Positions 11,113 to 60,458 of a DNA stretch of 64,000 nucleotides are shown piece by piece. The stretch comes from Octopus bimaculoides (taxonomy: Eukaryota), in NCBI RefSeq assembly GCF_001194135.2, contig NC_068990.1:4152502-4216501 (forward strand), read 5' to 3'. The first letter of the stretch is position 1. The number at the start of each line of letters is the position of its first letter. Position numbers and translations under genes: made by a program. Below the pieces are notes generated by a model, which did not search any database, was not told the origin of the DNA, and saw nothing but the letters and a program-made list of their open reading frames with translations.

Positions 11113-12533
11113 AAATTATGGATTTCTCATTGGTTGGAAATTACTGTCCATATACGAATTCTGAACTTCGTTGAAGAAGTTTTTCACGTGGATTCGTGTA
11201 TGAACGGTTATAAAAACCCTGATTTTCGGCAAACTCTCCAGTGATCGTTGGACGACCACTCAAATCCACGACACTCACCCTCTTGAGTATCGGCTAATAT
11301 TTATGCAATGTTCAATACTCAAATCTGACAATATTGAATTGTTGTGAACTCTTATAGCTAGAATGAAAAATTAGTCAATATTAAATTTAAGTCGTAATTC
11401 TCTACGACGAAATGACTTGTTTCTAAATGTTCTATAAATGCCAAAAAAATGTATATAATAAATTTAGAAATTTAATTCCTTTCACTTCTCGTTTCTTTCA
11501 GCTTGTTGAATTTATTTCTGTATATTAATGAAACTGTATTTTTTTATGTGTAACGGTCAAAAAAATATAATCTATATCTTCAACATACATGCACGTAATG
11601 AACGTACGTTCAGCGTCTTGGTATGTATACATCATAACATTTACGCAGCCTAAACTAAGAGTTATGCTTAGTGATAAATACTTATAATCAAGTTATAAGT
11701 AACGAGATTATCATTGTAGCTTTTAATTAAGAAACAATAATATTTGTTATAACTTACGAATGAAAACATTGTAAATAAAGATATAGTATATCTCACACTT
11801 CAACGACCTGTTATAAACCACATAGAATATCTTTCTCATTTTTTAAATCATTTTCATTCGATGTTTTTAAAACCCATTTCTAATGTCCTGTACTGCCTCC
11901 TCTTTTAGTCCCTTCGTGGCCAAGCTATAAAGAAATAATTTCCTCTAAGCTAACTCCGGAGAGAATTGTCAGCAGAATACTTTGATGCCATGCCGCGTTC
12001 TATTCCCGCGCGCATCATCATGTACAAACTGCACGAGGAACCGATGTATATTTGCTAACAGTATTATTCATGTACCAGTTTTCGCTATCTTCTATTAGTG
12101 GAGAAATAAATGTGGCCGTCAGTTATAACCTGTCTTTGTATTTCTTGGTGCTCTTAATCTTGACTCGTTTGGAACCAAAATATAATCTTACCAGGGCCGT
12201 AGTCACATCACCTTTTCACCGCGAAAACTGGGTGACTTGACTCAGAACTGCCAATACGTCAGTTCTTCCTTTATGAAATATTTATATTTTTTAGCAGCAA
12301 ACCCAGTTATATTCGTGAATTACCGTCTGAAGTGTTGAGATCATAAACAGGCAATAAGAAACTTCGGTCGAAAAACTCCATTTCAAAACTGTTTTCAGCA
12401 GTTTTCTATCGGATAGCGTCATTTTTATTGCCTACTGCTAGAAATGGCAGTCAAATCTGGTAGTGGGATTTGCCGAGTTAAGTACCTGCCAATTTTCCGT
12501 CCTGTGCAATTCATTTCTAGTAACTAATACAGT

Positions 12534-13460
12534 GTGACATGCTCTCCAGTTTCTTCCGGCGCTTCCGACATCTCTGACGCGTTACCATTTCAAGCTGCTG
12601 TATCTTTCGCTTCTTCTCCTTTTACTGGCGATCCGGCCATTTGGTTTTCACAGCTAGAAGCCAATTTTGCTGCCAATAACATCACTTCTGATGTCAGGCG
12701 ATCACATTTATTAGTCAGCGTTCTGCATCTTGCTTTAAGCAGCGAGGTTACAGACATTATTACAGCTAACGCGGATCAACTATCTTATTTAACCGTGAAA
12801 TCTGAAATATTGTGCCGTAAGCGTTATCATCAGTTGATATTTAAAGAAATCCTAGGCGATAAAAGTCCTTCACAATTGCTTCGCAGAATGCGGGACTTGG
12901 CTGAGAGTAATCCTATGGACGAAGATATACTCAAACACTTATTTTTCTCTCGCCTTCCCAATAATGTCCAAGCTATTTTGACCACCATCAATGAGCACAG
13001 TTCAAACCAACAGCCAGTGGATTTAGCTGATGGTATTATGGACATTTCATCTTCACAAACTGCTAAGAATCTCCCCCCCATCATTTCTTCCTCATCGGCT
13101 GAGTTATCCTTTTTCCTCAAGGAGTTCGACAGGAAAATCCAACTGCTTACTGAGCAAATCTCTTGTTTATAGTTTCCTTCCATTTCTTCTCGGGCAAGAA
13201 CGCGAAATCATTCGTTTTGTCCTCATCGTACACGTTCCTTCAGTAGAAGCCCGATGCAGTATTGCTGGTACCACCAGCGTTTTGGACCACGTACGCACAA
13301 GTGTATGTCGCCATGTGCTTTTTCATCTATTCAACTCCAGGAAAACACGATTCCCAGGGATTAACTGCGGCTACATTTCTGGATAGATCATTGGAATGCA
13401 GCGGTTTTTTCGTCCACCATTCTAACTCCAAGCAGCTTTTATTAGTCGCTCACATTGGAT
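12534..13460 (+). mobile_element. Truncated Ty3/Gypsy gag remnant with possible protease start
   Basis: ORF 12534-13172 contains PFTGDPAIWFSQLEANF, EILGDKSPSQLLRRM and LFFSRLPNNVQAIL, typical of this invertebrate Gypsy gag class. In another frame CWYHQRFGPRTHKCMSPC starts at ~13263. No RT or integrase follows. Confidence 0.85.
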
Positions 13461-13640: not shown

Positions 13641-13971
13641 GGGCAGTAAGTTTTCAGATTAACACTCGCACGATATTCACTACGGTGTTAGGGTTAGGGT
13701 TTTAGGATCAGGGTTAGGGTTTTAGGGTTGGGGTTAGGGTTACGGTCGGAATTCACTAACCCTAACACCCTAGTGAAGATCGTGCGGGTGTTAATCTGAA
13801 AAATTACCAAACGGGCGAAGGTAAAGCGGGTGCACACCATCTAACCCTAACCTTAACACCTACCCTAACAATAAAAATATCTGAATGAATGCAATCAAGA
13901 ATTTGCAAACGATATTGTCAGGCTCCTCGTATCATTAATAATACCTAACAGGTAAAAGTAAATTACTGCCC
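13641..13971. mobile_element. Non-autonomous TIR element with nested hairpin and telomere-like repeats
   Basis: Outer inverted GGGCAGTAA (13641-13649) and TTACTGCCC (13963-13971). Inner ~35-bp inverted arms (13646-13682 versus 13771-13808) enclose degenerate (TTAGGG)n. CCCTAA-like units at ~13755-13770 and ~13842-13869. Confidence 0.65.
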
Positions 13972-21485: not shown

Positions 21486-21838
21486 CAATAAGATATACTC
21501 GCGCATTTGTTTCATGCTTGCTTTTTCTTTTCCATGTTAGCAAGCATTAGATGAATGTTATTGTGTCATTATATAGTGGTAAACTTTACCAGTTTTCAAG
21601 CAAGAGATCTTTTATTCTATATAGTGTACATACTAGAGTATATATTCTAATGTATACTAGTGCGAACATGCTGTCTTTAAGATTGCATGTTTTATATTGA
21701 TTTGATATCATTGTATCATATATTCCTATAGTGTATATATGCATAAGTATACATATGGCATAGATGTAGGAAGAACACTGACCGGACACGTAACATGTAG
21801 GAAGCTCAATGTGAATAGCGGAAAATGTGAAATACAGC

Positions 21839-22267
21839 ATATTAATAGTTATCACCGTAGTCTTCTTTAGAGAGACTTAGAAATATTAATATTTGTATTT
21901 TTGAAAACCAGTGGATGTATTCCATTGAATTAAGGTAAATAATCCTTTGAACAGATGATCAGTAGCGATGCCTGCTGGGTTCGGCTGCTCTACATTGATA
22001 AGGGGAAAATAACCCGAAACTAGTCTGTAGATGCCAGAGCAGCAAGGGGAAGCGGCTGACCTCCCCTGTTCGAAGGTTATAATGGACACAGGTTCGTGTG
22101 TCAAATAGCTAGCTAGAGGTGATGGCCTCTTGGAGCTCATCAATGGCAGCATTCGTCCTATTTTCCTGGACTGCCATATTAGCTTAGCGATAACTATTAA
22201 TATCCAGTACTGCTGCCATAGTCTCCTTCTGAGAGACTTAGAAATATTGATATTTCTATTTTTGTAA
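21839..22267 (+). mobile_element. Retrozyme-like or Penelope pLTR-like unit carrying the hammerhead
   Basis: Imperfect ~50-bp direct repeats at 21855-21906 and 22216-22267 (period 361 bp). 15-bp inverted pair at 21839-21853/22189-22203. Interior is a chain of hairpins. Confidence 0.65.
21984..22043 (+). ncRNA. Type I hammerhead ribozyme, U3-A8 core variant, palindromic stem III
   Basis: Stem I TCTACA (21989-94)/TGTAGA (22026-31) plus distal GCTGC/GCAGC. Core TTGATAA (21995-22001). Stem II GGG/CCC with loop GAAAATAA. GAAA at 22016-19. Stem III palindrome ACTAGT (22019-24). GUC triplet with C17 at 22025. Confidence 0.8.
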
Positions 22268-22746
22268 AATAGAGCTATATGATGAAATGCAATTATGTTA
22301 AAAGAACATGCTTTTATAAAGCAGTGAAAAATTACTACCTAAATACTGTCAATAATTATATATATATGCACACATACTTCGATGCATTTTAAATATAGTT
22401 AGTATTTGTTACTAAACACGATATCATCATAAATACCATTATCCTATTTATATTTGTGTAGTGAAAAATTGAGCCCATCACATTCTGTCACCCTTTTGAT
22501 GCAAACTGGACAAAAGAAGTATATTGTTTGTTTATATATAACGTGGAGTTATGTGATCAAATAGTTACATACAAAATGAAAGTGAAATGAAGCAAGCCCA
22601 TATGTAGATATGTAAAAGCAATGTTATCTTAGTATTACTTATGTCAAAATAAAAATTATAATTACGGTCGTTAAAGCAATATGGCAATAGGTTAAAGCAA
22701 TATGGTTGTAATGTCTCAGTATATTTACGGTCGTTAAAGCAATAGG

Positions 22747-23445
22747 CATACCTACACAATTGTGCCCCCTATTTTGTTTCCTTATAACTTCCGGAAAAAT
22801 GGATATTTTTTAATGAAATTTTCTACACAGAGATTTCAGATGGTCTAAATTCTGATGACATCAAAATTGGTTGTGAACAAAAAGTTTTCCAGGTGAAAAG
22901 AGTTTCAGAAAATTCACTGGAGTGGCTTTGTCTCCTCATCACTTTTGGAGAAATGAGAATTTTCCTTAATGAAATTTTCTGCAAATATCTTTCAAAGTGT
23001 CATTTACGATTATATTGGAATTTGATGTGGAAATAAAAATGGGCTCACACACATACATACTCACATCATAATTTTTTTTTTCAAAATTTCATGTTCCATT
23101 TTGTAGATACATGCGATGTGTATCAGTATTTGTGTGTGCAAGCCCACTAACTTTTGCATATTAAATTTTGATATAATAGTAATCTACACACTCTGAAAGA
23201 TATTTGTAGAAAAAAGTATCAAAAAGTATTCATTTTTCTGAAAGTTACATGGAAATAATGTCAACTCATGTGAATTTTCCAAAACTTCTCTCCCCACCCA
23301 AAGAAAGACATTTTCGCAACAAATTCTGATATAGTTGGAATCTACACTATCCGAAGCATATTTTGGAAAAAATTTCATTCAAAGATCTCCGTTTTTATGG
23401 AAGTTATGAGGAGACAAAGTTATAAGGAACACATGTATAGGTATG
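22747..23445. mobile_element. Older, CpG-decayed foldback element related to the 1.4-2.2 kb family
   Basis: Ends CATACCTACACA.. and ..ACATGTATAGGTATG. Arms contain ATAACTTCCGGAAAAATGGATATTTTTTAATGAAATTTT and a diverged reverse complement, the same module as at ~1491. Confidence 0.65.
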
Positions 23446-25001
23446 TCAAGCAAAGCATGCAACAGTTGAAAATGTAAAATTTGAAGCAGACAGTTATAAG
23501 ATGAAATACTGCAAAACATTTAACAGAACATGCATTTTAATATTAAAAAACGACGAGGAATAAATGAAGAATATTAAAAACAATGAAACATAAGCTTTAA
23601 TAGAAGTCAGAGATATTTGAACATGTAATGTTTGCCAAGTAATTCAAATGACAGTTACTTGTGTTTGTACATGTGCTTAAACTGTAATTCAGTCATGACC
23701 TCTTCACTCCAGCCAGGATAAGTTATATCAGTGCACACATATTACTGGAATACTCGAATAAACAGGAATTAAAAAAAAATTATATCCAAGATGTACACAC
23801 ACACACAGCCTGAGTTCCTATCCACCACCCCCATTTCAACGATATGTGTGATCAAGATGAACTCTTCCATTAATTTTGAGATACCTGATGAGATAGAGGG
23901 CAGTTCAGCATATTAAATAATGTGATGATGTAATACATTAAGGAAAAATAAACTGCCATGCTATTGAAATATTTGTAGCATATATAGAACTGTTGAATAT
24001 CAATTCACCTTCATTATATATATCTATATCTATAATGAATAAATAAGGATAAAGTATCCAGGTGTGTACTGTACATGCATTCACTTATAATCTGGGTAAT
24101 GGCTAACTGCATTGAGTTGTAAGGAGCACTTAGCATTGCTTAAATAAGCAATCTCACTGTATTTCATCTGATGGGTAAATCCTGGGTCCATTTCACTAGA
24201 TTTTACTGGGTGTATATTCAAGACAATTACAATGAATGCAGAAACTAACACATCGGCATATTTCTTTTTTAGTTTCTGCAGTATATACAGCATATTTGAA
24301 TCAAATGCAGTTGCTAGTTGTCTATGCTGCAGAAACATGCATCAGACATATTTAAACCAAATACGTTGTATAATTGACTATAGAAATAAAATGTGTGTGC
24401 ATGCATGGATGTGTGTGACTCACTCTCTCCCTCTATCTCCTTATCAACAACACTCAAAATGAGGGAAAGTGCTTCTTTTTTTGCATATACAATTTGTATT
24501 TCACTCATTCTAAACAGCCACCCTCCCACCTGTCTGTCTTCTGTCTGTCTGCTTCTTTTCTGCTCTGTGTCTCTCTGGTTAAATATTAAAACTGAAACCA
24601 ATAAAAGGCTTCCAGTCAGAAGTTAATGTTATTTTGCTATCTTGTCATTTTTAATGTTAATTTGACACACTGCTGTCAACCACACATATCACTATATCTA
24701 TCAGCACACACATACATTTATATAAGGTGAGATAAAGAGATACAGAAAGTATTATTGAAAGCAAGATAAGGTAAAACATAATAAAAGAAATGGAATTCAA
24801 GGAGATTGGTGTTGGTTTATTGCTATAAAAATAAAATTATTCTTCATCTTATCTCTTCTACTCTAAGGAGTTGTCTGAAACTTCCCTTCAAAACATTAAA
24901 GTTTAAAGTTCTATTTTTACACATGCATGTATGTATGTACGTACATAGATGCATTTGTATGTAGGTATGTATGTGCATAGATACATACATACATTTGTAT
25001 G

Positions 25002-25635
25002 TACAAAAATAAGAGGAATGACCAGCAAAAGTGGACTCCTATATGCTAGAAATAGATGTCGAATTGATTAATATCAATTTCTACCCTCATTAATAAATTT
25101 TATATAATAATGTTCTCAAACCGGTAAATTAACTGCAAAAATTTATCAACTGCAGAATTATTTGCGGACTTAGCGCGCCAGATTGAAGACATTTGAAATG
25201 ATACACTGAATGTAATTTGTAGAACTCTACACGTGCTCCCTTTCGGTTGGAGTCTTGTGTCTAGTTCTGGAAATTGCATTGCGAATCGACGGACTACGCT
25301 GACGATCTTGCAGATATTTAATTATGTAAATTTTAACAGGTGAAACCATGGTACGTAGGTTAATGGGTTTTTTTTGGTTTTTATTTATTTGGTATTTTTT
25401 CATTTGTCTTGCCCTTTTACAAGCTGTTGTGTCGCTGAATTTTTACTGAGAACATATTTTTTTTTTCGAGGTTAGATGATTCGGCATCTATTTCTAGCAT
25501 ATAGGAGTTCACTTTTGCTTGTCATTCCTCTTATTTTTGTATGCAATATAATTTTAATCTTCGGATTTTTTTAATATGCTAAACCTCTGGTTTTAATTGA
25601 TTAATATCAATTTCTACCCTCATTAATAAATTTTA
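25002..25635. mobile_element. Unclassified non-autonomous element with combined inverted and direct terminal repeats
   Basis: 63-bp inverted pair at 25002-25064/25479-25541 (3 mismatches by eye). Identical 41-bp direct repeat at 25062-25102/25595-25635. CpG-rich interior. Confidence 0.7.
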
Positions 25636-25667
25636 CATTTGTATGTATATATATGTACATAAATACA

Positions 25668-26377
25668 TACTGAGGTGGTATCAAAAAGTTCCCAAATGAG
25701 ATGGCAGCACACAGTTGCATCTGTTGTGAGAGCTAACAGTGACATTCAGTGCACCAAGAAACATTACTGTTTCCTTCGCATGTTGTGAAATTTGTGTTTT
25801 TGCGATCGTATGTATGTTTTAGTCTGTGACTTTGTCATGGACAGGAAGCTGGAACAAAAAGCTGACATGAAATTTTGTGTTAGACTTGGGAAGTCTGCTA
25901 TGATGACGTTGAGCATGCTTTGGCAAGCTCATGGCAATGGGTCATACACAACGTTTTGAGTGGTTTGGATGCTTCAAAAGTGGAATAACATTCCTGGAAG
26001 ATGATGAGCGATCTGCAAGATCTGCCATGAGCATCACCCCTGGAAACGTGGAGAAAATTCCTCAGCTTTTTCATGAGGATCCTTGGAAGACAACCAACGA
26101 CATTGCTGATGTTGTTGGTCTGTTGTATGGGTCCATACAGACAATTGTAATGTCTGAATTGAACACGTGGTGTGTCTTTACCAAGTTTGTCTCCTACCTG
26201 CTGACCACTGAGCAGCAAGAGCATCTTGTCAAAGTCTGTTAAGATTTCTGCCAGCATGCCGCTGATGACCCATTTTTCATGTCAAGGATCATAACCAGTG
26301 ACGAGAGTTGGATCTATGGGCATGACTCTGAGATGAAGCAGCAGTTGTCACAATGGAAGAGCCCTTCATCTCCATAG
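25668..26377 (+). mobile_element. 3'-truncated mariner transposon remnant
   Basis: From ATG 25837: MDRKLEQKADMKFCVRLGKSA / QRFEWFGCFKSG..LEDDERSAR / TKFVSYLLTTEQQEHLVKVC* / RIITSDESWIYGHDSEMKQQLSQWKSPSSP. Frameshift and stop present. Left end TACTGAGGTGGTATCAAAAAGTTCCC is TIR-like. Confidence 0.92.
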
Positions 26378-57789: not shown

Positions 57790-58428
57790 GTACTCACCAC
57801 TGATGCAGAAGACAGGAAAGTAGCATGAAAGTGCTATTGTGAGAGGTTGCCAAATGTGGAGAATGCATGGGATAAACAGGGGTTACTGCATGCTGACCCT
57901 ACAGAGGGAGTAGCAAGGTAATTAAAGTGATCAAGGGAATGAAGAAAGGAAGTTGTGAGTCGATCAAAGATAGTTGCAGAAACACTCAAAATATCTGTTG
58001 AAGTAGGATGCATGATTACAATCTGTAGAGTTGATTTAATTTAGTCATATAGGAAGGTGTCATATCCAATGACTAGTACAGCAGAATTATTATAGACTGT
58101 TACAAAATCAAAGGCGATGCCTATGAGAGAAGCAACTATAGAGAAATCAAACTGTTTGTTCAAGTTATGAAGGTCACAGAGAAAGTATTAGCAGAACTGG
58201 TCTATGACAAAGTAGAGATAGATGAGATGCAGTTTGACTTTATCCCCAGAAGAAGCGCTACAGATGCACTCTTTCTAATGAGACAACTGTGGGAGAAACG
58301 CTTGGTTAAGAATAAATTGCTCTACCTGGTTTTCATTGATTTGGAGTTGTTTGACAGGGTACTACACTCAGTAATTAGATAACCACTGAGGAAGCTAGGT
58401 GTAGACAAATAGCTTGTGAGGGCTGTAG
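57790..58428 (+). mobile_element. RTE-type LINE RT N-terminal fragment
   Basis: KGDAYERSNYREIKLFVQVMKVTEKVL..DEMQFDFIPRRSATDALFLMRQLWEK..LYLVFIDLE-FDRV matches conserved non-LTR RT domains. Stops present. Confidence 0.9.
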
Positions 58429-58621
58429 GTAAGAAAGAAAACAAGACCTTGGTATCTTCATGAAAATGGCCATACATGATGTGTAGAAAAGGAGTAAGTA
58501 AAACTCTACACATTGTGCCCAATGTGTGGAGCACTTTAGTCAAATGACTTTTATCACGGACAATACCTAGTGAGTGGAATTTGGTAGGTGGAAACTATGC
58601 AGAAGCTTGTCACTAATGCAT

Positions 58622-58670
<49 letters not shown>

Positions 58671-58818
58671 ATTAGAAGGTAAAGCTTCTTGAATTATAAA
58701 TGAATTTCACATTACTGAACATTCAGATGATTGAAGTAAGGAAGCAGCAAGATTTACGAGCAAAAATATTTGTAAACACATCAAAACTTACAATTCTATA
58801 TTTAAGAAATGAGGAATT

Positions 58819-59112
58819 ATGTACATTATTTACATTTGATGGATATTTGTCCTCATCTTGTTTGTTGTTAACACGTTTCAGCTGATATACCCTCCAGCCT
58901 TCTTCAGGTGTCTTGGGGAAAGTTCGAACCTGGGCTCTCCTCATTCCTAAGGTATTTTTCGATGTTATTATTTTTATCCTTTAGGAATGAGAACCCAGGT
59001 TCGAAATTTCCCCAAGACACCTGAAGAAGGCTGGAGGGCATATCAGCCGAAACGTTGTGTTAACAACAAACAAGATGAGGACAAATATCTGTCGAATGTA
59101 AATAATGTACAT
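58819..59112. repeat. Inverted pair of ~135-bp hammerhead-bearing repeats, Penelope pLTR-like
   Basis: 58819-58952 is the near reverse complement of 58978-59112, with a 25-bp spacer. Confidence 0.9.
59016..59061 (+). ncRNA. Minimal type I hammerhead ribozyme motif
   Basis: GACAC / CTGAAGA (59021-27) / extra A / GGCTG-GAGGGCATAT-CAGCC / GAAA / palindromic ACGT / GUU triplet / GTGTT pairing with GACAC. Confidence 0.7.
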
Positions 59113-60458
59113 CAATACTTGATGAATCTGAGATTTGATTGGTTGCTGAAAACCCATTTGAAAATGCACCACACATTCATCTAGTCAAGTATCATATCCA
59201 AAACACTTTACACACACACACACACACATGCACTTATGTTTACACGCAAAAAAACTGATATTCCATGCCTTCAGTATTATATGTGTGAAACACATAAAAG
59301 CAGCAAGGTGCTTGTTGTTAATGAAAAGTAATTGAATAATGTTTCCATATGACCAATTTTCAAAGTATGCCAAATTCACAGAGTAGAATAAATATACTAT
59401 TTTATCCAAATTGTGAAAGGTTGTCATCAGATGTTACACTTTTCTGTGAGACAAATATTACAGCCATTAATATAGAGGGACATGTGTTTTATCAGATTTA
59501 TAATTGTTCATATCACCACCTTTTAACCTCAATATATTTACATGGTGATGTATCTTTTTCAGGCTTACCTACCGACTTATGCATGTAAAGACTGGATATG
59601 GTGGTCTCCGAAAAAGAAACTTTCATGATTCAATGGAGGGAGAGGAGGCTGCAGCAATTTATTCTGTAGTGAAGGGAGCAAAATGAGGCAAGTAAGACAT
59701 TTTGGTCATCTACTGTATTTGTCTCCATCCATTGTTATCTTCATCAGGCCTGGCCACTGGATTGAAGATGATCATGCATGAGGGAGTGAAACTGACAGTG
59801 CACAACTCTTCTTCACTTTAAAAAAAAAAAGCCACCGCATAAGTTATGAGTCAGCGTCAAGGATGCCTAAATGATCCTTACCGCTCTGACTGATGAGCAT
59901 GATGCCAATAATACAGAAGACATGACAATATTACATATCTTTGAATGTGAGTAGATGAATACATTATGGGTTCTGCATATGATAATTGAATTGATGAATG
60001 TGTGTTACATTCCAAAATGCTTGTCGACAACCAATCAAATCTCAATGATTTATCATATTTTGTTGTGTTTATGAATCACTTATATATTGTCACACTGTTT
60101 CCCTAATATAATGGCTGGAATAATCTGAAACATGAATGTAATTGTCACAACTTAGGACCCTTTAACTTCAAATAAATTAAACAAGCTTTAATTCAAATGC
60201 TGAGCACTTTTTTTGTTTTGTAAGCACAAATCTAAGCAATACATTTTTAAGATGTGTAATTGCTGACATCAAGTTTACGAATCACTCAAGGTTGAGCCTC
60301 TATGTGGCGTATGTCTATAGCAAAAACCAAATTGATTCTATTTCAGTTTTGATTCTCATAGAAACTGATGTATTCACTTTTATATTCTATTATATTATAT
60401 CTCTAAGCCTTACGTTTATGAACAAAAATACAAATCTATATATGTGTGTGTGTATGTG

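What the first reader, a model, noticed from the sequence alone, without database searches (positions are those of the whole stretch)
21839..22267. Retrozyme-like 361-bp unit with a compensated U3-A8 hammerhead ribozyme
Seen: all type I hammerhead elements in register at 21984-22043. Stem I is 6 bp plus a 7-nt bulge plus 5 bp, stem II is G-C closed with an A-rich loop, and GAAA and a GUC site follow. Stem III is the perfect palindrome ACUAGU, which cannot fold as a monomer. The core reads UUGAUAA, so C3 and G8 are both changed. Established: C3-G8 is a Watson-Crick tertiary pair in the active hammerhead, and U3-A8 double changes can retain cleavage. Minimal type I hammerheads with palindromic stem III cleave as dimers and occur in Penelope-like pLTRs and non-LTR retrozymes. 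Also seen: ~50-bp direct repeats 361 bp apart and consecutive hairpins (AGGGGA/TCCCCT, GACACA/TGTGTC, AGAGG/CCTCT, ATGGCAG/CTGCCAT), with no recognisable protein. Inference: a slightly-more-than-monomer insertion of a self-cleaving, possibly circular-RNA retrozyme family with a non-canonical core. I cannot tell whether it is already described.
Basis: partly seen in the sequence, partly recalled or inferred. Interest (0 to 1): 0.85.

Follow-up and report, generated by a model that had tools for sequence, protein, structure and literature searches.

The report
Hammerhead-ribozyme retroelement relic in octopus DNA
The sequence really does carry a hammerhead self-cleaving RNA motif with a compensated U3-A8 core, but it sits in a single old insertion of a short non-coding Penelope-like/retrozyme-type mobile element in an octopus genome, a kind of element and a core variant that are both already described.

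Summary
At 21984-22043 (+) every element of a type I hammerhead is in register: helix I, core UUGAUAA, a 3-bp G-C helix II, GAAA, the palindrome ACUAGU and a GUC site cut after 22025. A covariance model built only from four experimentally validated animal retrozyme hammerheads ranks it first in the window (26.7 bits, E about 1e-5; next hit 12.6 bits). Descriptor scans on shuffles expect at most 0.003 such motifs per window. Rfam finds nothing, but it also misses bona fide tandem hammerheads, so that says little.

The window is octopus DNA. The "361-bp unit" is a 424-bp insertion (21839-22262) with a probable 13-bp target-site duplication, a short inverted fragment at its 5' end and a 53-nt partial tandem repeat. 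A younger hammerhead-bearing element 3 kb downstream (25004-25634, perfect 13-bp duplication) has the same layout, which matches Penelope-like integration. A third, inverted pair of minimal hammerheads lies at 58.8-59.1 kb.

The locus has one ribozyme and no tandem array. No second copy was reachable, so a circular-RNA family is unproven. Natural U3-A8 covariation was reported in 2014. Verdict: a real feature and a new member of a known kind, of modest interest.

The parts
21826..21838 (.). Probable left target-site duplication, TGTGAAATACAGC
   Evidence: It matches 22263-22275 (TGTAAAATAGAGC) at 11 of 13 positions and directly abuts the element ends. The length equals the perfect 13-bp duplication of element B. 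On its own it is modestly significant (local-alignment null p about 0.05).
21839..21853 (+). 5' inverted fragment (a1), the reverse complement of 22189-22203. The repeat finder reports the arm as 21833-21853.
   Evidence: repeat I5: 21 nt, 90% complementary. Element B has the same position and order (repeat I1).
21855..21907 (+). Upstream partial copy of the element's 3' end (direct repeat 1, pLTR-like)
   Evidence: 53 nt, 87% identical to 22216-22268, spacing 361. A weaker possible extension is seen.
21939..22080 (+). Long imperfect hairpin with the hammerhead at its tip
   Evidence: 163-nt segment, -52.2 kcal/mol, z -2.4 (1 of 200 shuffles fold as well). The plus strand is more stable than the minus strand (-46.1 kcal/mol).
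21984..22043 (+). Type I hammerhead motif with a U3-A8 core. Helix I 21984-21994 pairs with 22026-22043; core 21995-22001; helix II 22002-22015; GAA 22016-22018; palindromic helix III 22019-22024; predicted cut between 22025 and 22026.
   Evidence: 26.7 bits, E 1.4e-5; positive control. The two-strand fold forms an intermolecular ACUAGU helix, at -43.2 kcal/mol against 2 x -17.8 for monomers.
22045..22177 (+). Four consecutive short hairpins (22045-22067, 22085-22102, 22115-22130, 22143-22177) in the element body
22189..22209 (+). Internal segment a2, the source of the inverted 5' fragment
   Evidence: repeat I5.
22216..22262 (+). 3' terminal region of the element (direct repeat 2, called to 22268), ending in a run of five T
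22263..22275 (.). Probable right target-site duplication, TGTAAAATAGAGC

Best explanation
The locus 21839-22262 is one old, solitary insertion of a short (about 355-bp unit), non-coding, hammerhead-bearing retroelement in an octopus genome. It belongs to the class that links Penelope-like elements (PLEs) and animal non-LTR retrozymes.

Shown:
- The hammerhead motif is real in form and carries U3-A8 in place of C3-G8.
- The copy has a partial tandem repeat of its 3' end, a short inverted fragment at its 5' end and a probable 13-bp target-site duplication.
- The same layout recurs in a younger hammerhead-bearing neighbour.

Inferred:
- The element was transcribed from a source copy and reverse-transcribed in trans by a PLE-type RT/endonuclease.
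- Template jumping would give the partial tandem. Priming on both DNA strands, with internal initiation, would give the inverted fragment.
- In source arrays or multimeric transcripts, two ribozymes would pair through the ACUAGU palindrome into a double hammerhead and cut after C17. This would release roughly 355-361-nt RNAs with 5'-OH and 2',3'-cyclic phosphate ends, which an RtcB-type ligase could circularise.
- At this locus there is only one ribozyme, and the repeats have diverged by 13%. The copy is therefore most likely an inert relic (a 'monomer derivative') and not a producer of circular RNA.
- U3-A8 was probably already present in the source element and did not arise by two private mutations.
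For: Motif significance:
- It is the only descriptor hit in the window.
- Shuffle expectations are 0.003 or below per window.
- The independent covariance model gives 26.7 bits, E 1.4e-5, 14 bits above the next hit. That is within the 20.9-34.5-bit range of bona fide canonical tandem hammerheads.

Features not imposed by my descriptors that match published hallmarks (PMC4209133):
- a G10.1-C11.1 pair;
- palindromic positions 15.2-16.2;
- a possible extra nucleotide after A9;
- a 6-bp helix I followed by a loop and a closing stem.

Genome context:
- Three hammerhead-like motifs occur in this window against 0.01 expected.
- The window is octopus DNA. Octopus genomes carry Penelope families (PMC13282606).

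Architecture:
- Element B (25004-25634) has a perfect 13-bp duplication, a 63-nt inverted 5' fragment (95%) and a 44-nt direct repeat (98%), in the same order as here.
- Partial tandems plus an inverted 5' copy are the described PLE insertion signature.
- A PLE enzyme nicks and extends both strands and initiates reverse transcription internally (PMC11167929).
- No coding capacity is present.

The U3-A8 pair:
- U3-A8 is a natural covariation in PLE hammerheads.
- Swapped 3-8 pairs partly retain cleavage.
- With about 7% divergence per copy, hitting exactly positions 3 and 8 with pairing-preserving transitions has a probability of roughly 0.002 (inference).
Against: - No second copy of the unit could be found: none in the window and none in 20 kb of Octopus bimaculoides DNA. 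No eukaryotic genome database was available.
- The hammerhead lies in the unique body, not in the repeated (pLTR-like) part where canonical PLEs carry it.
- No RT or GIY-YIG remnant lies within about 4 kb.
- The target-site duplication is imperfect and only modestly significant.
- Rfam hammerhead models give no hit even at E up to 10, though they also miss the canonical control set.
- Catalysis by this U3-A8 sequence is untested.
- A 13-bp duplication and a 3' T-run would also fit a SINE mobilised by a LINE.
Confidence: 0.7

Rival explanations
1. The unit belongs to a currently active retrozyme family whose consensus hammerhead is U3-A8. The family exists elsewhere as tandem arrays, self-cleaves as dimers and accumulates as circular RNAs of about 360 nt. 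This locus would be a rolling-circle cDNA copy slightly longer than one unit.
For: - The unit size, GC content (43%), lack of coding capacity and self-paired fold (z -2.8) fit animal retrozymes (170-400 nt; mussel 350-390 bp; PMC7229834).
- Helix III is like that of axolotl HHR_Amex1, which works as a dimer.
- The insertion ends do not coincide with the cleavage site. This fits a circular or multimeric template.
Against: - The locus has one ribozyme and no tandem array.
- The repeats are 13% diverged.
- The inverted 5' fragment and the target-site duplication shared with element B point to PLE-type integration, not to a special rolling-circle product.
- The protein-word trick found no related ORF in public assemblies.
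- No expression data were reachable.
Confidence: 0.2
2. This is a decayed copy of a canonical C3-G8 hammerhead element in which two private transitions (C3 to U, G8 to A) happened to fall on the two paired positions. Under this reading the pairing is coincidental and the ribozyme is dead.
For: - The copy is old: the repeats are 87% identical.
- Both changes are transitions.
- All 14 motif instances with the same helix II and III found in metagenomes have CUGAUGA.
Against: - With about 7% divergence per copy, the joint probability of exactly these two compensating changes is roughly 0.002 (inference).
- The other 11 core positions and all three helices are intact.
- U3-A8 families are documented in nature.
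Confidence: 0.12
3. This is a SINE-like, Pol III-transcribed element mobilised by a LINE and not by a PLE. The 5' inversion would arise by twin priming. The hammerhead would be either functional, as in the Schistosoma Sm-alpha SINE, or incidental.
For: - A 13-bp target-site duplication is typical of LINE/SINE integration.
- Both elements A and B end in a T-run.
- Three GTTCG (B-box-like) motifs lie in the unit.
- LINE and SINE families are the dominant repeats in octopus.
- Hammerhead SINEs are known in schistosomes (PMC6765202).
Against: - No tRNA-like region is detected.
- The B-box matches are imperfect.
- Twin priming does not explain the direct partial copy of the 3' end lying between the inverted fragment and the body. 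PLE insertions typically show that feature.
Confidence: 0.1
4. This is a chance match to a relaxed hammerhead pattern in AT-rich intergenic DNA.
For:
- A general descriptor with any helix III and any of the tried cores expects about 0.17 hits per window.
- Many windows are screened.
- Rfam is silent.
Against: - The independent covariance model gives E about 1e-5, with a 14-bit gap to background.
- Candidate-like hits occurred in 0 of 1000 shuffles.
- There is a closing distal helix of five Watson-Crick pairs.
- The motif sits at the apex of a 140-nt hairpin, inside an element with insertion hallmarks, on the same strand as the element's polarity.
- Two further hammerhead-bearing elements lie in the same window.
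Confidence: 0.03

Closest known systems
Animal non-LTR retrozymes (Cervera & de la Pena 2020, PMC7229834), especially the axolotl Rtz_331 / HHR_Amex1 hammerhead and the mussel 350-390-bp repeats
   Same: - A type I hammerhead with a 6-bp helix I followed by a loop and a closing stem, and a short G-C helix II.
- Helix III is a single A-U pair capped by a palindromic tetraloop (GAAACUAGUC here, GAAACAUGUC in Ax330).
- The unit is about 355-361 bp, GC is 43%, it is non-coding, and the predicted fold is highly paired with the ribozyme inside a long hairpin.
- The target-site duplication is longer than 4 bp.
   Different: - There is no tandem array and only one ribozyme at the locus.
- The core is U3-A8, not C3-G8.
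- There is no sequence similarity outside the ribozyme.
- Copy number, cleavage and circular RNA are unknown.
Penelope-like element hammerheads and insertion structure (Cervera & de la Pena 2014, PMC4209133; Craig et al. 2021, PMC8557442; Frangieh et al. 2024, PMC11167929)
   Same: - The natural U3-A8 covariation.
- A palindromic helix III implying dimeric cleavage.
- G10.1-C11.1.
- Motifs mostly found as solitary copies.
- A partial tandem (pseudo-LTR) plus an inverted fragment at the 5' end.
- Co-occurrence with classic minimal PLE hammerheads in the same genome (element C at 58812-59119).
   Different: - There is no RT/GIY-YIG ORF within 4 kb.
- The element is only about 0.4 kb.
- The ribozyme has the 'canonical' retrozyme-type architecture (3-bp helix II, 8-nt loop, long helix I), not the minimal PLE form (6-8-bp helix II, 4-5-bp helix I).
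- It lies outside the repeated part.
Schistosoma Sm-alpha / Sj-alpha SINE-like hammerhead elements (Ferbeyre et al. 1998, as summarised in PMC6765202)
   Same: A short, non-autonomous, dispersed element with an internal type I hammerhead and a possible Pol III-type T-run end.
   Different: There is no convincing A/B box or tRNA-like part, and the terminal repeat and inversion structure differs.

Membership tests
Hammerhead ribozyme, type I | A three-way junction with open helix I, closed helix II and helix III in the order I-core-II-GAAA-III-H-I | tested here: met
   The full-length match to covariance model R1, positions 1-44, scores 26.7 bits with E 1.4e-5.
Hammerhead ribozyme, type I | Invariant core C3 U4 G5 A6 (N7) G8 A9 ... 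G12 A13 A14 ... A15.1-U16.1, H17 | tested here: inconclusive
   All positions are met except C3 to U and G8 to A, which together keep the 3-8 Watson-Crick pair. The same natural covariation is reported in PLE hammerheads. A swapped 3-8 pair partly restores cleavage.
Hammerhead ribozyme, type I | Score above the Rfam gathering threshold for a hammerhead family | tested here: not met
   There is no hit at gathering or at E up to 10. Control: Rfam also misses 13 canonical CUGAUGA tandem hammerheads with the same helix III, so this test has little power for this architecture.
Hammerhead ribozyme, type I | Site-specific self-cleavage after H17 | not testable with these tools
   This needs in vitro transcription of monomer and dimer constructs.
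Animal non-LTR retrozyme | Tandem repeat with at least two consecutive units each carrying a complete hammerhead | tested here: not met
   There is one hammerhead. Only 53 nt (perhaps about 70) of the unit is repeated.
Animal non-LTR retrozyme | Unit of 150-450 bp, GC below 50%, no ORF, no LTR/PBS/PPT | tested here: met
   The unit is 355-361 bp with GC 0.43. No protein homologues or Pfam domains are found.
Animal non-LTR retrozyme | Highly self-paired predicted RNA | tested here: met
   The fold is -110.4 kcal/mol, z -2.8, with 1 of 100 shuffles as stable. The ribozyme sits at the tip of a long hairpin.
Animal non-LTR retrozyme | Multi-copy family in the genome, expressed as linear and circular RNA | not testable with these tools
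   No eukaryotic genome or transcriptome collection was available. The unit is single in the window and absent from one 20-kb O. bimaculoides locus.
Penelope-like element (autonomous) | ORF with a TERT-like RT and a GIY-YIG endonuclease | tested here: not met
   103 stop-to-stop ORFs from 17.5-26.5 kb and 56.5-61.5 kb give no RT or GIY-YIG Pfam match.
Penelope-like element (insertion signature; also expected of non-autonomous derivatives) | A partial tandem forming a pseudo-LTR, often with an inverted truncated copy at the 5' end | tested here: met
   The direct repeat and the abutting inverted fragment. The identical order is seen in element B, which has a perfect target-site duplication.
Penelope-like element (insertion signature; also expected of non-autonomous derivatives) | The hammerhead located within the pseudo-LTR | tested here: not met
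   The hammerhead, 21984-22043, lies in the unique body between the repeats.

The most novel reading that the evidence does not exclude
U3-A8 is the consensus of a living octopus family of short PLE-derived retrozymes. These would have a full-architecture (not minimal) type I hammerhead, cleave as dimers and give abundant circular RNAs of about 360 nt. That would be the first retrozyme family described in cephalopods, and a natural test of how far the 3-8 tertiary pair can be exchanged in a tertiary-stabilised hammerhead.
Probability: 0.2. Interest if true: 0.5.

Novelty: new member of a known kind. Interest (0 to 1): 0.3.

Why it matters
If the family is confirmed genome-wide, it would add cephalopods to the animals that carry hammerhead-bearing non-autonomous retroelements. 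It would also give a natural U3-A8 example in a canonical-architecture type I hammerhead.

The shared layout of elements A and B is a target-site duplication, an inverted fragment, a partial tandem and then the body. This gives a compact natural substrate for testing the dual-strand, internally initiated integration model proposed for Penelope-like elements.

As a single old copy it has no obvious consequence for the host locus.

Tried and rejected
- **Rfam.** Searches at gathering and at E up to 10 found no hammerhead. I do not count this as evidence against the motif, because Rfam also misses bona fide canonical hammerheads with the same helix III.
- **Looking for family members through spurious ORFs.** The 88-aa minus-strand ORF has no exact record and no homologue. 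This is uninformative, because octopus non-coding ORFs are evidently not in that collection.
- **IMG/VR pattern scan.** It found nothing.
- **Metagenome pattern scan.** It found real hammerheads, but they are unrelated outside the ribozyme.
- **Sequence homology of the unit to coral, mussel and axolotl retrozymes.** There is none beyond the ribozyme.
- **A larger duplication of about 640 bp around the locus.** It is not significant.
- **tRNA-like or SINE head.** ARAGORN finds none. The GTTCG motifs are only weak B-box matches.
- **Full-text search for printed sequences** of the motif or of the octopus repeats. It returned only primers or nothing.
- **PLE coding remnants near the locus.** None were found.
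- **Organism identification via the gag-like ORF.** It gave only 34-40% sea-urchin hits. The mariner fragment and the shared repeats then pointed to Octopus.

Full report
**1. Observation**

On the plus strand:
- GCUGC (21984-21988) and UCUACA (21989-21994) pair with UGUAGA (22026-22031) and GCAGC (22039-22043), around a one-sided 7-nt bulge. This is helix I.
- UUGAUAA (21995-22001) occupies core positions 3-9.
- GGG/CCC (22002-22004 / 22013-22015) closes an 8-nt A-rich loop. This is helix II, with G10.1-C11.1.
- GAA (22016-22018) is G12-A14.
- ACUAGU (22019-22024) is a perfect palindrome at positions 15.1-16.1.
- C17 is at 22025.

The 53-nt direct repeats (21855-21907 and 22216-22268, 87% identical, 361 nt apart) and the four downstream hairpins are also there. 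A 21-nt inverted repeat (21833-21853 against 22189-22209) abuts the direct repeats.

**2. Is it more than chance?**

- A descriptor scan of both strands allowed canonical, compensated and single-mutant cores. It returns this site only.
- Dinucleotide shuffles expect 0.003 hits per 64 kb for the minimal helix III with U3-A8, and 0.17 for a very general descriptor over all cores.
- With a palindromic helix III descriptor, candidate-like hits occurred in 0 of 1000 shuffles.
- The strongest test is independent of the sequence. I built covariance model R1 from only four experimentally validated retrozyme hammerheads: coral, mussel and two axolotl, taken from Supplementary Table 2 of PMC7229834. With filters off, the candidate is the top hit in the window: 21989-22031, 26.7 bits, E about 1.4e-5, full model length. 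The next hit scores 12.6 bits.
- As a positive control, the same model gives 20.9-34.5 bits to canonical hammerheads found in tandem repeats in metagenomes.
- Rfam gives nothing. It also gives nothing for those canonical controls, so its silence is uninformative for hammerheads with a 1-bp helix III.

**3. Where the window comes from**

The window is animal DNA. It has microsatellites, N gaps, a DUF7041 gag-like ORF, a mariner fragment and a LINE-like RT fragment.
- The only database hit of the mariner fragment is an Octopus bimaculoides protein.
- The O. bimaculoides locus that encodes that protein shares the window's interspersed repeats at up to 90% identity, with 83 HSPs.
- Repeat motifs I recalled from octopus genomes occur with 0-1 mismatches. 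This is a lead from memory and not a test.

Octopus genomes carry Penelope families (PMC13282606).

**4. What the unit is**

- No other copy of 21800-22300 exists in the window.
- No protein is encoded.
- No RT or GIY-YIG remnant lies within about 4 kb.
- The 361-nt unit folds to -110.4 kcal/mol (z -2.8), with the ribozyme at the tip of a hairpin of about 140 nt. The minus strand is weaker.

The decisive clue came from the second-best hit of model R1. At 25294-25358 (+) the sequence reads CUACG-CUGACGA-U-CUUG-(26 nt)-CAGG-U-GAAA-CCAUGG-UA-CGUAG. It has a canonical core, a 5-bp helix I, an 8-nt palindromic helix III, and a U-U mismatch at the base of helix II like that described for axolotl HHR_Amex2.

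This motif sits inside a young insertion, element B (25004-25634). Element B has:
- a perfect 13-bp target-site duplication, ACATTTGTATGTA (24991-25003 and 25635-25647);
- a 63-nt inverted fragment at its 5' end (25002-25064, the reverse complement of 25479-25541, 95%);
- a 44-nt direct repeat of its 3' end (25062-25105 and 25595-25638, 98%).

The order is duplication, inverted fragment, direct repeat 1, body with hammerhead, source of the inverted fragment, direct repeat 2, duplication. The candidate has the same order. Its ends, defined the same way, are flanked by TGTGAAATACAGC (21826-21838) and TGTAAAATAGAGC (22263-22275). These match at 11 of 13 positions, about the same decay as its 87% repeats. 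The candidate is therefore a 424-bp insertion, 21839-22262.

A third element, C (58812-59119), is an inverted pair of arms of about 130 nt, 92% identical.
- Each arm carries a classic minimal PLE hammerhead: CUGAAGA, an extra nucleotide after A9, a 6-bp helix II and a palindromic ACGU.
- The right-arm copy is intact at 59016-59061. The left-arm copy has lost G16.2-U16.1-H17.
- (CA)n runs lie on both sides, about 90-140 bp from the element.

With one relaxed descriptor the window holds three hammerhead-like motifs against 0.01 expected.

**5. Mechanism**

Published PLE insertions are partial tandems (pseudo-LTRs). They often carry an inverted truncated copy at the 5' end and show a bias for microsatellites (PMC8557442 and its preprint). 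A purified PLE enzyme nicks and extends both DNA strands and starts reverse transcription internally on the RNA (PMC11167929). Retrozymes have been argued to be non-autonomous PLE derivatives, with dispersed 'monomer derivatives' that can no longer move (10.64898/2026.07.22.740005).

My reading is as follows; the steps are inferred.
- The candidate is such a monomer derivative.
- Bottom-strand target-primed reverse transcription copied the RNA and jumped back onto a 3' end. This made direct repeat 1.
- Top-strand priming at an internal site made the short inverted fragment.
- In source copies, the ACUAGU palindrome would let two ribozymes form a double hammerhead. A two-strand fold gives an intermolecular helix III at -43.2 kcal/mol, against 2 x -17.8 for monomers.
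- Cleavage after C17 followed by RtcB-type ligation would give circles, as shown for axolotl and mussel elements.
- Here, one ribozyme and 13% repeat divergence argue for an inert relic.

**6. The U3-A8 core**

- C3-G8 is a pair in the active fold.
- C3G/G8C double mutants partly restore cleavage, both in a classic hammerhead and in a PLE hammerhead.
- That U3-A8 double changes retain activity is from my own knowledge of the hammerhead literature (Martick & Scott 2006; Przybilski & Hammann 2007). I could not read those papers here.
- Natural U3-A8 covariation was reported in Schistosoma mansoni Cercyon PLE hammerheads, with about 1,300 hits against about 2,000 canonical ones (PMC4209133). The variant is therefore not new.
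- With about 7% divergence per copy, two private transitions landing on exactly these two positions is a roughly 0.002 event (inference). U3-A8 was probably inherited from the source element, but only a family alignment can show that.

**7. Comparison and verdict**

- It works like an animal type I retrozyme/PLE hammerhead. Helix III is identical in design to axolotl HHR_Amex1.
- It fails the operational retrozyme criterion of two tandem ribozymes, and the autonomous PLE criterion of an ORF.
- It meets the PLE insertion-signature criterion.
- I file it as a solitary copy of a non-autonomous PLE-derived, retrozyme-like element.
- No paper in the searched library links hammerheads or retrozymes with cephalopods. 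It is thus a new member of a known kind, and not a new kind.
- Interest is modest, at 0.3.

**8. Limits**

- No eukaryotic genome or transcriptome collection was available. Copy number, family consensus, tandem arrays and expression are therefore untested.
- E-values from the short calibration of R1 are rough.
- The relaxed descriptor that captures element B was written after seeing it.

Noticed in passing
window 25004-25634 (+), motif at 25294-25358: Element B is a young, non-coding insertion of about 630 bp. It has a perfect 13-bp target-site duplication (ACATTTGTATGTA) in a TGTA-type microsatellite, a 63-nt inverted 5' fragment and a 44-nt direct repeat (98%). It carries a hammerhead-like motif with a canonical core (CUGACGA ... 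GAAACCAUGGUA) that has a U-U mismatch at the base of helix II and a 26-nt loop 2. Its layout matches that of the finding.
   Followed up: partly
window 58812-59119: Element C is a head-to-head inverted pair with arms of about 130 nt, 92% identical. Each arm carries a minimal Penelope-type hammerhead. The right-arm copy at 59016-59061 is intact in form, and the left-arm copy has a 3-nt deletion at the cleavage site. (CA)n runs lie on both sides, about 90-140 bp away (58618-58674 and 59210-59236). An RT-like ORF fragment at 58077-58379 lies about 640 bp upstream, but it has no Pfam match.
   Followed up: partly
loci L001, L002, L004-L010 (JGI metagenome contigs): These contigs hold canonical hammerheads, CUGAUGA-GGGGG-CAAnnA-CCCC-GAAACUAGUC, with covarying helix I. 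They sit in tandem repeats of 603-634 nt (GC about 0.42, no long ORF) on contigs of about 1 kb. Rfam misses them. They are unrelated to the window outside the ribozyme. They may be retrozyme-like repeats of an unidentified eukaryote, or viroid-like RNAs.
   Followed up: partly
window 12528-13169 (+) and 13687-13746: There is a gag-like ORF with DUF7041, whose best relatives are 34-40% identical sea-urchin proteins. It is followed about 500 bp downstream by a short TTAGGG-like telomeric-type repeat.
   Followed up: no
window 25634-26374: This is a degenerate mariner-type transposon fragment. Its protein is 65% identical to O. bimaculoides LOC106874790, and its DNA is 74% identical to that locus. 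It lies immediately 3' of element B.
   Followed up: partly
window 22774-23411 and 1449-2157: This is a satellite-like repeat of about 150 bp, present in direct and inverted copies about 500 bp downstream of the finding and again near the start of the window.
   Followed up: no
window 21977-21987, 22073-22079, 22091-22097; 3' ends at 22258-22262 and 25630-25633: There are three GTTCG (B-box-like) motifs inside the unit, and both elements A and B end in a T-run. This may hint at Pol III transcription, or it may be coincidence.
   Followed up: no
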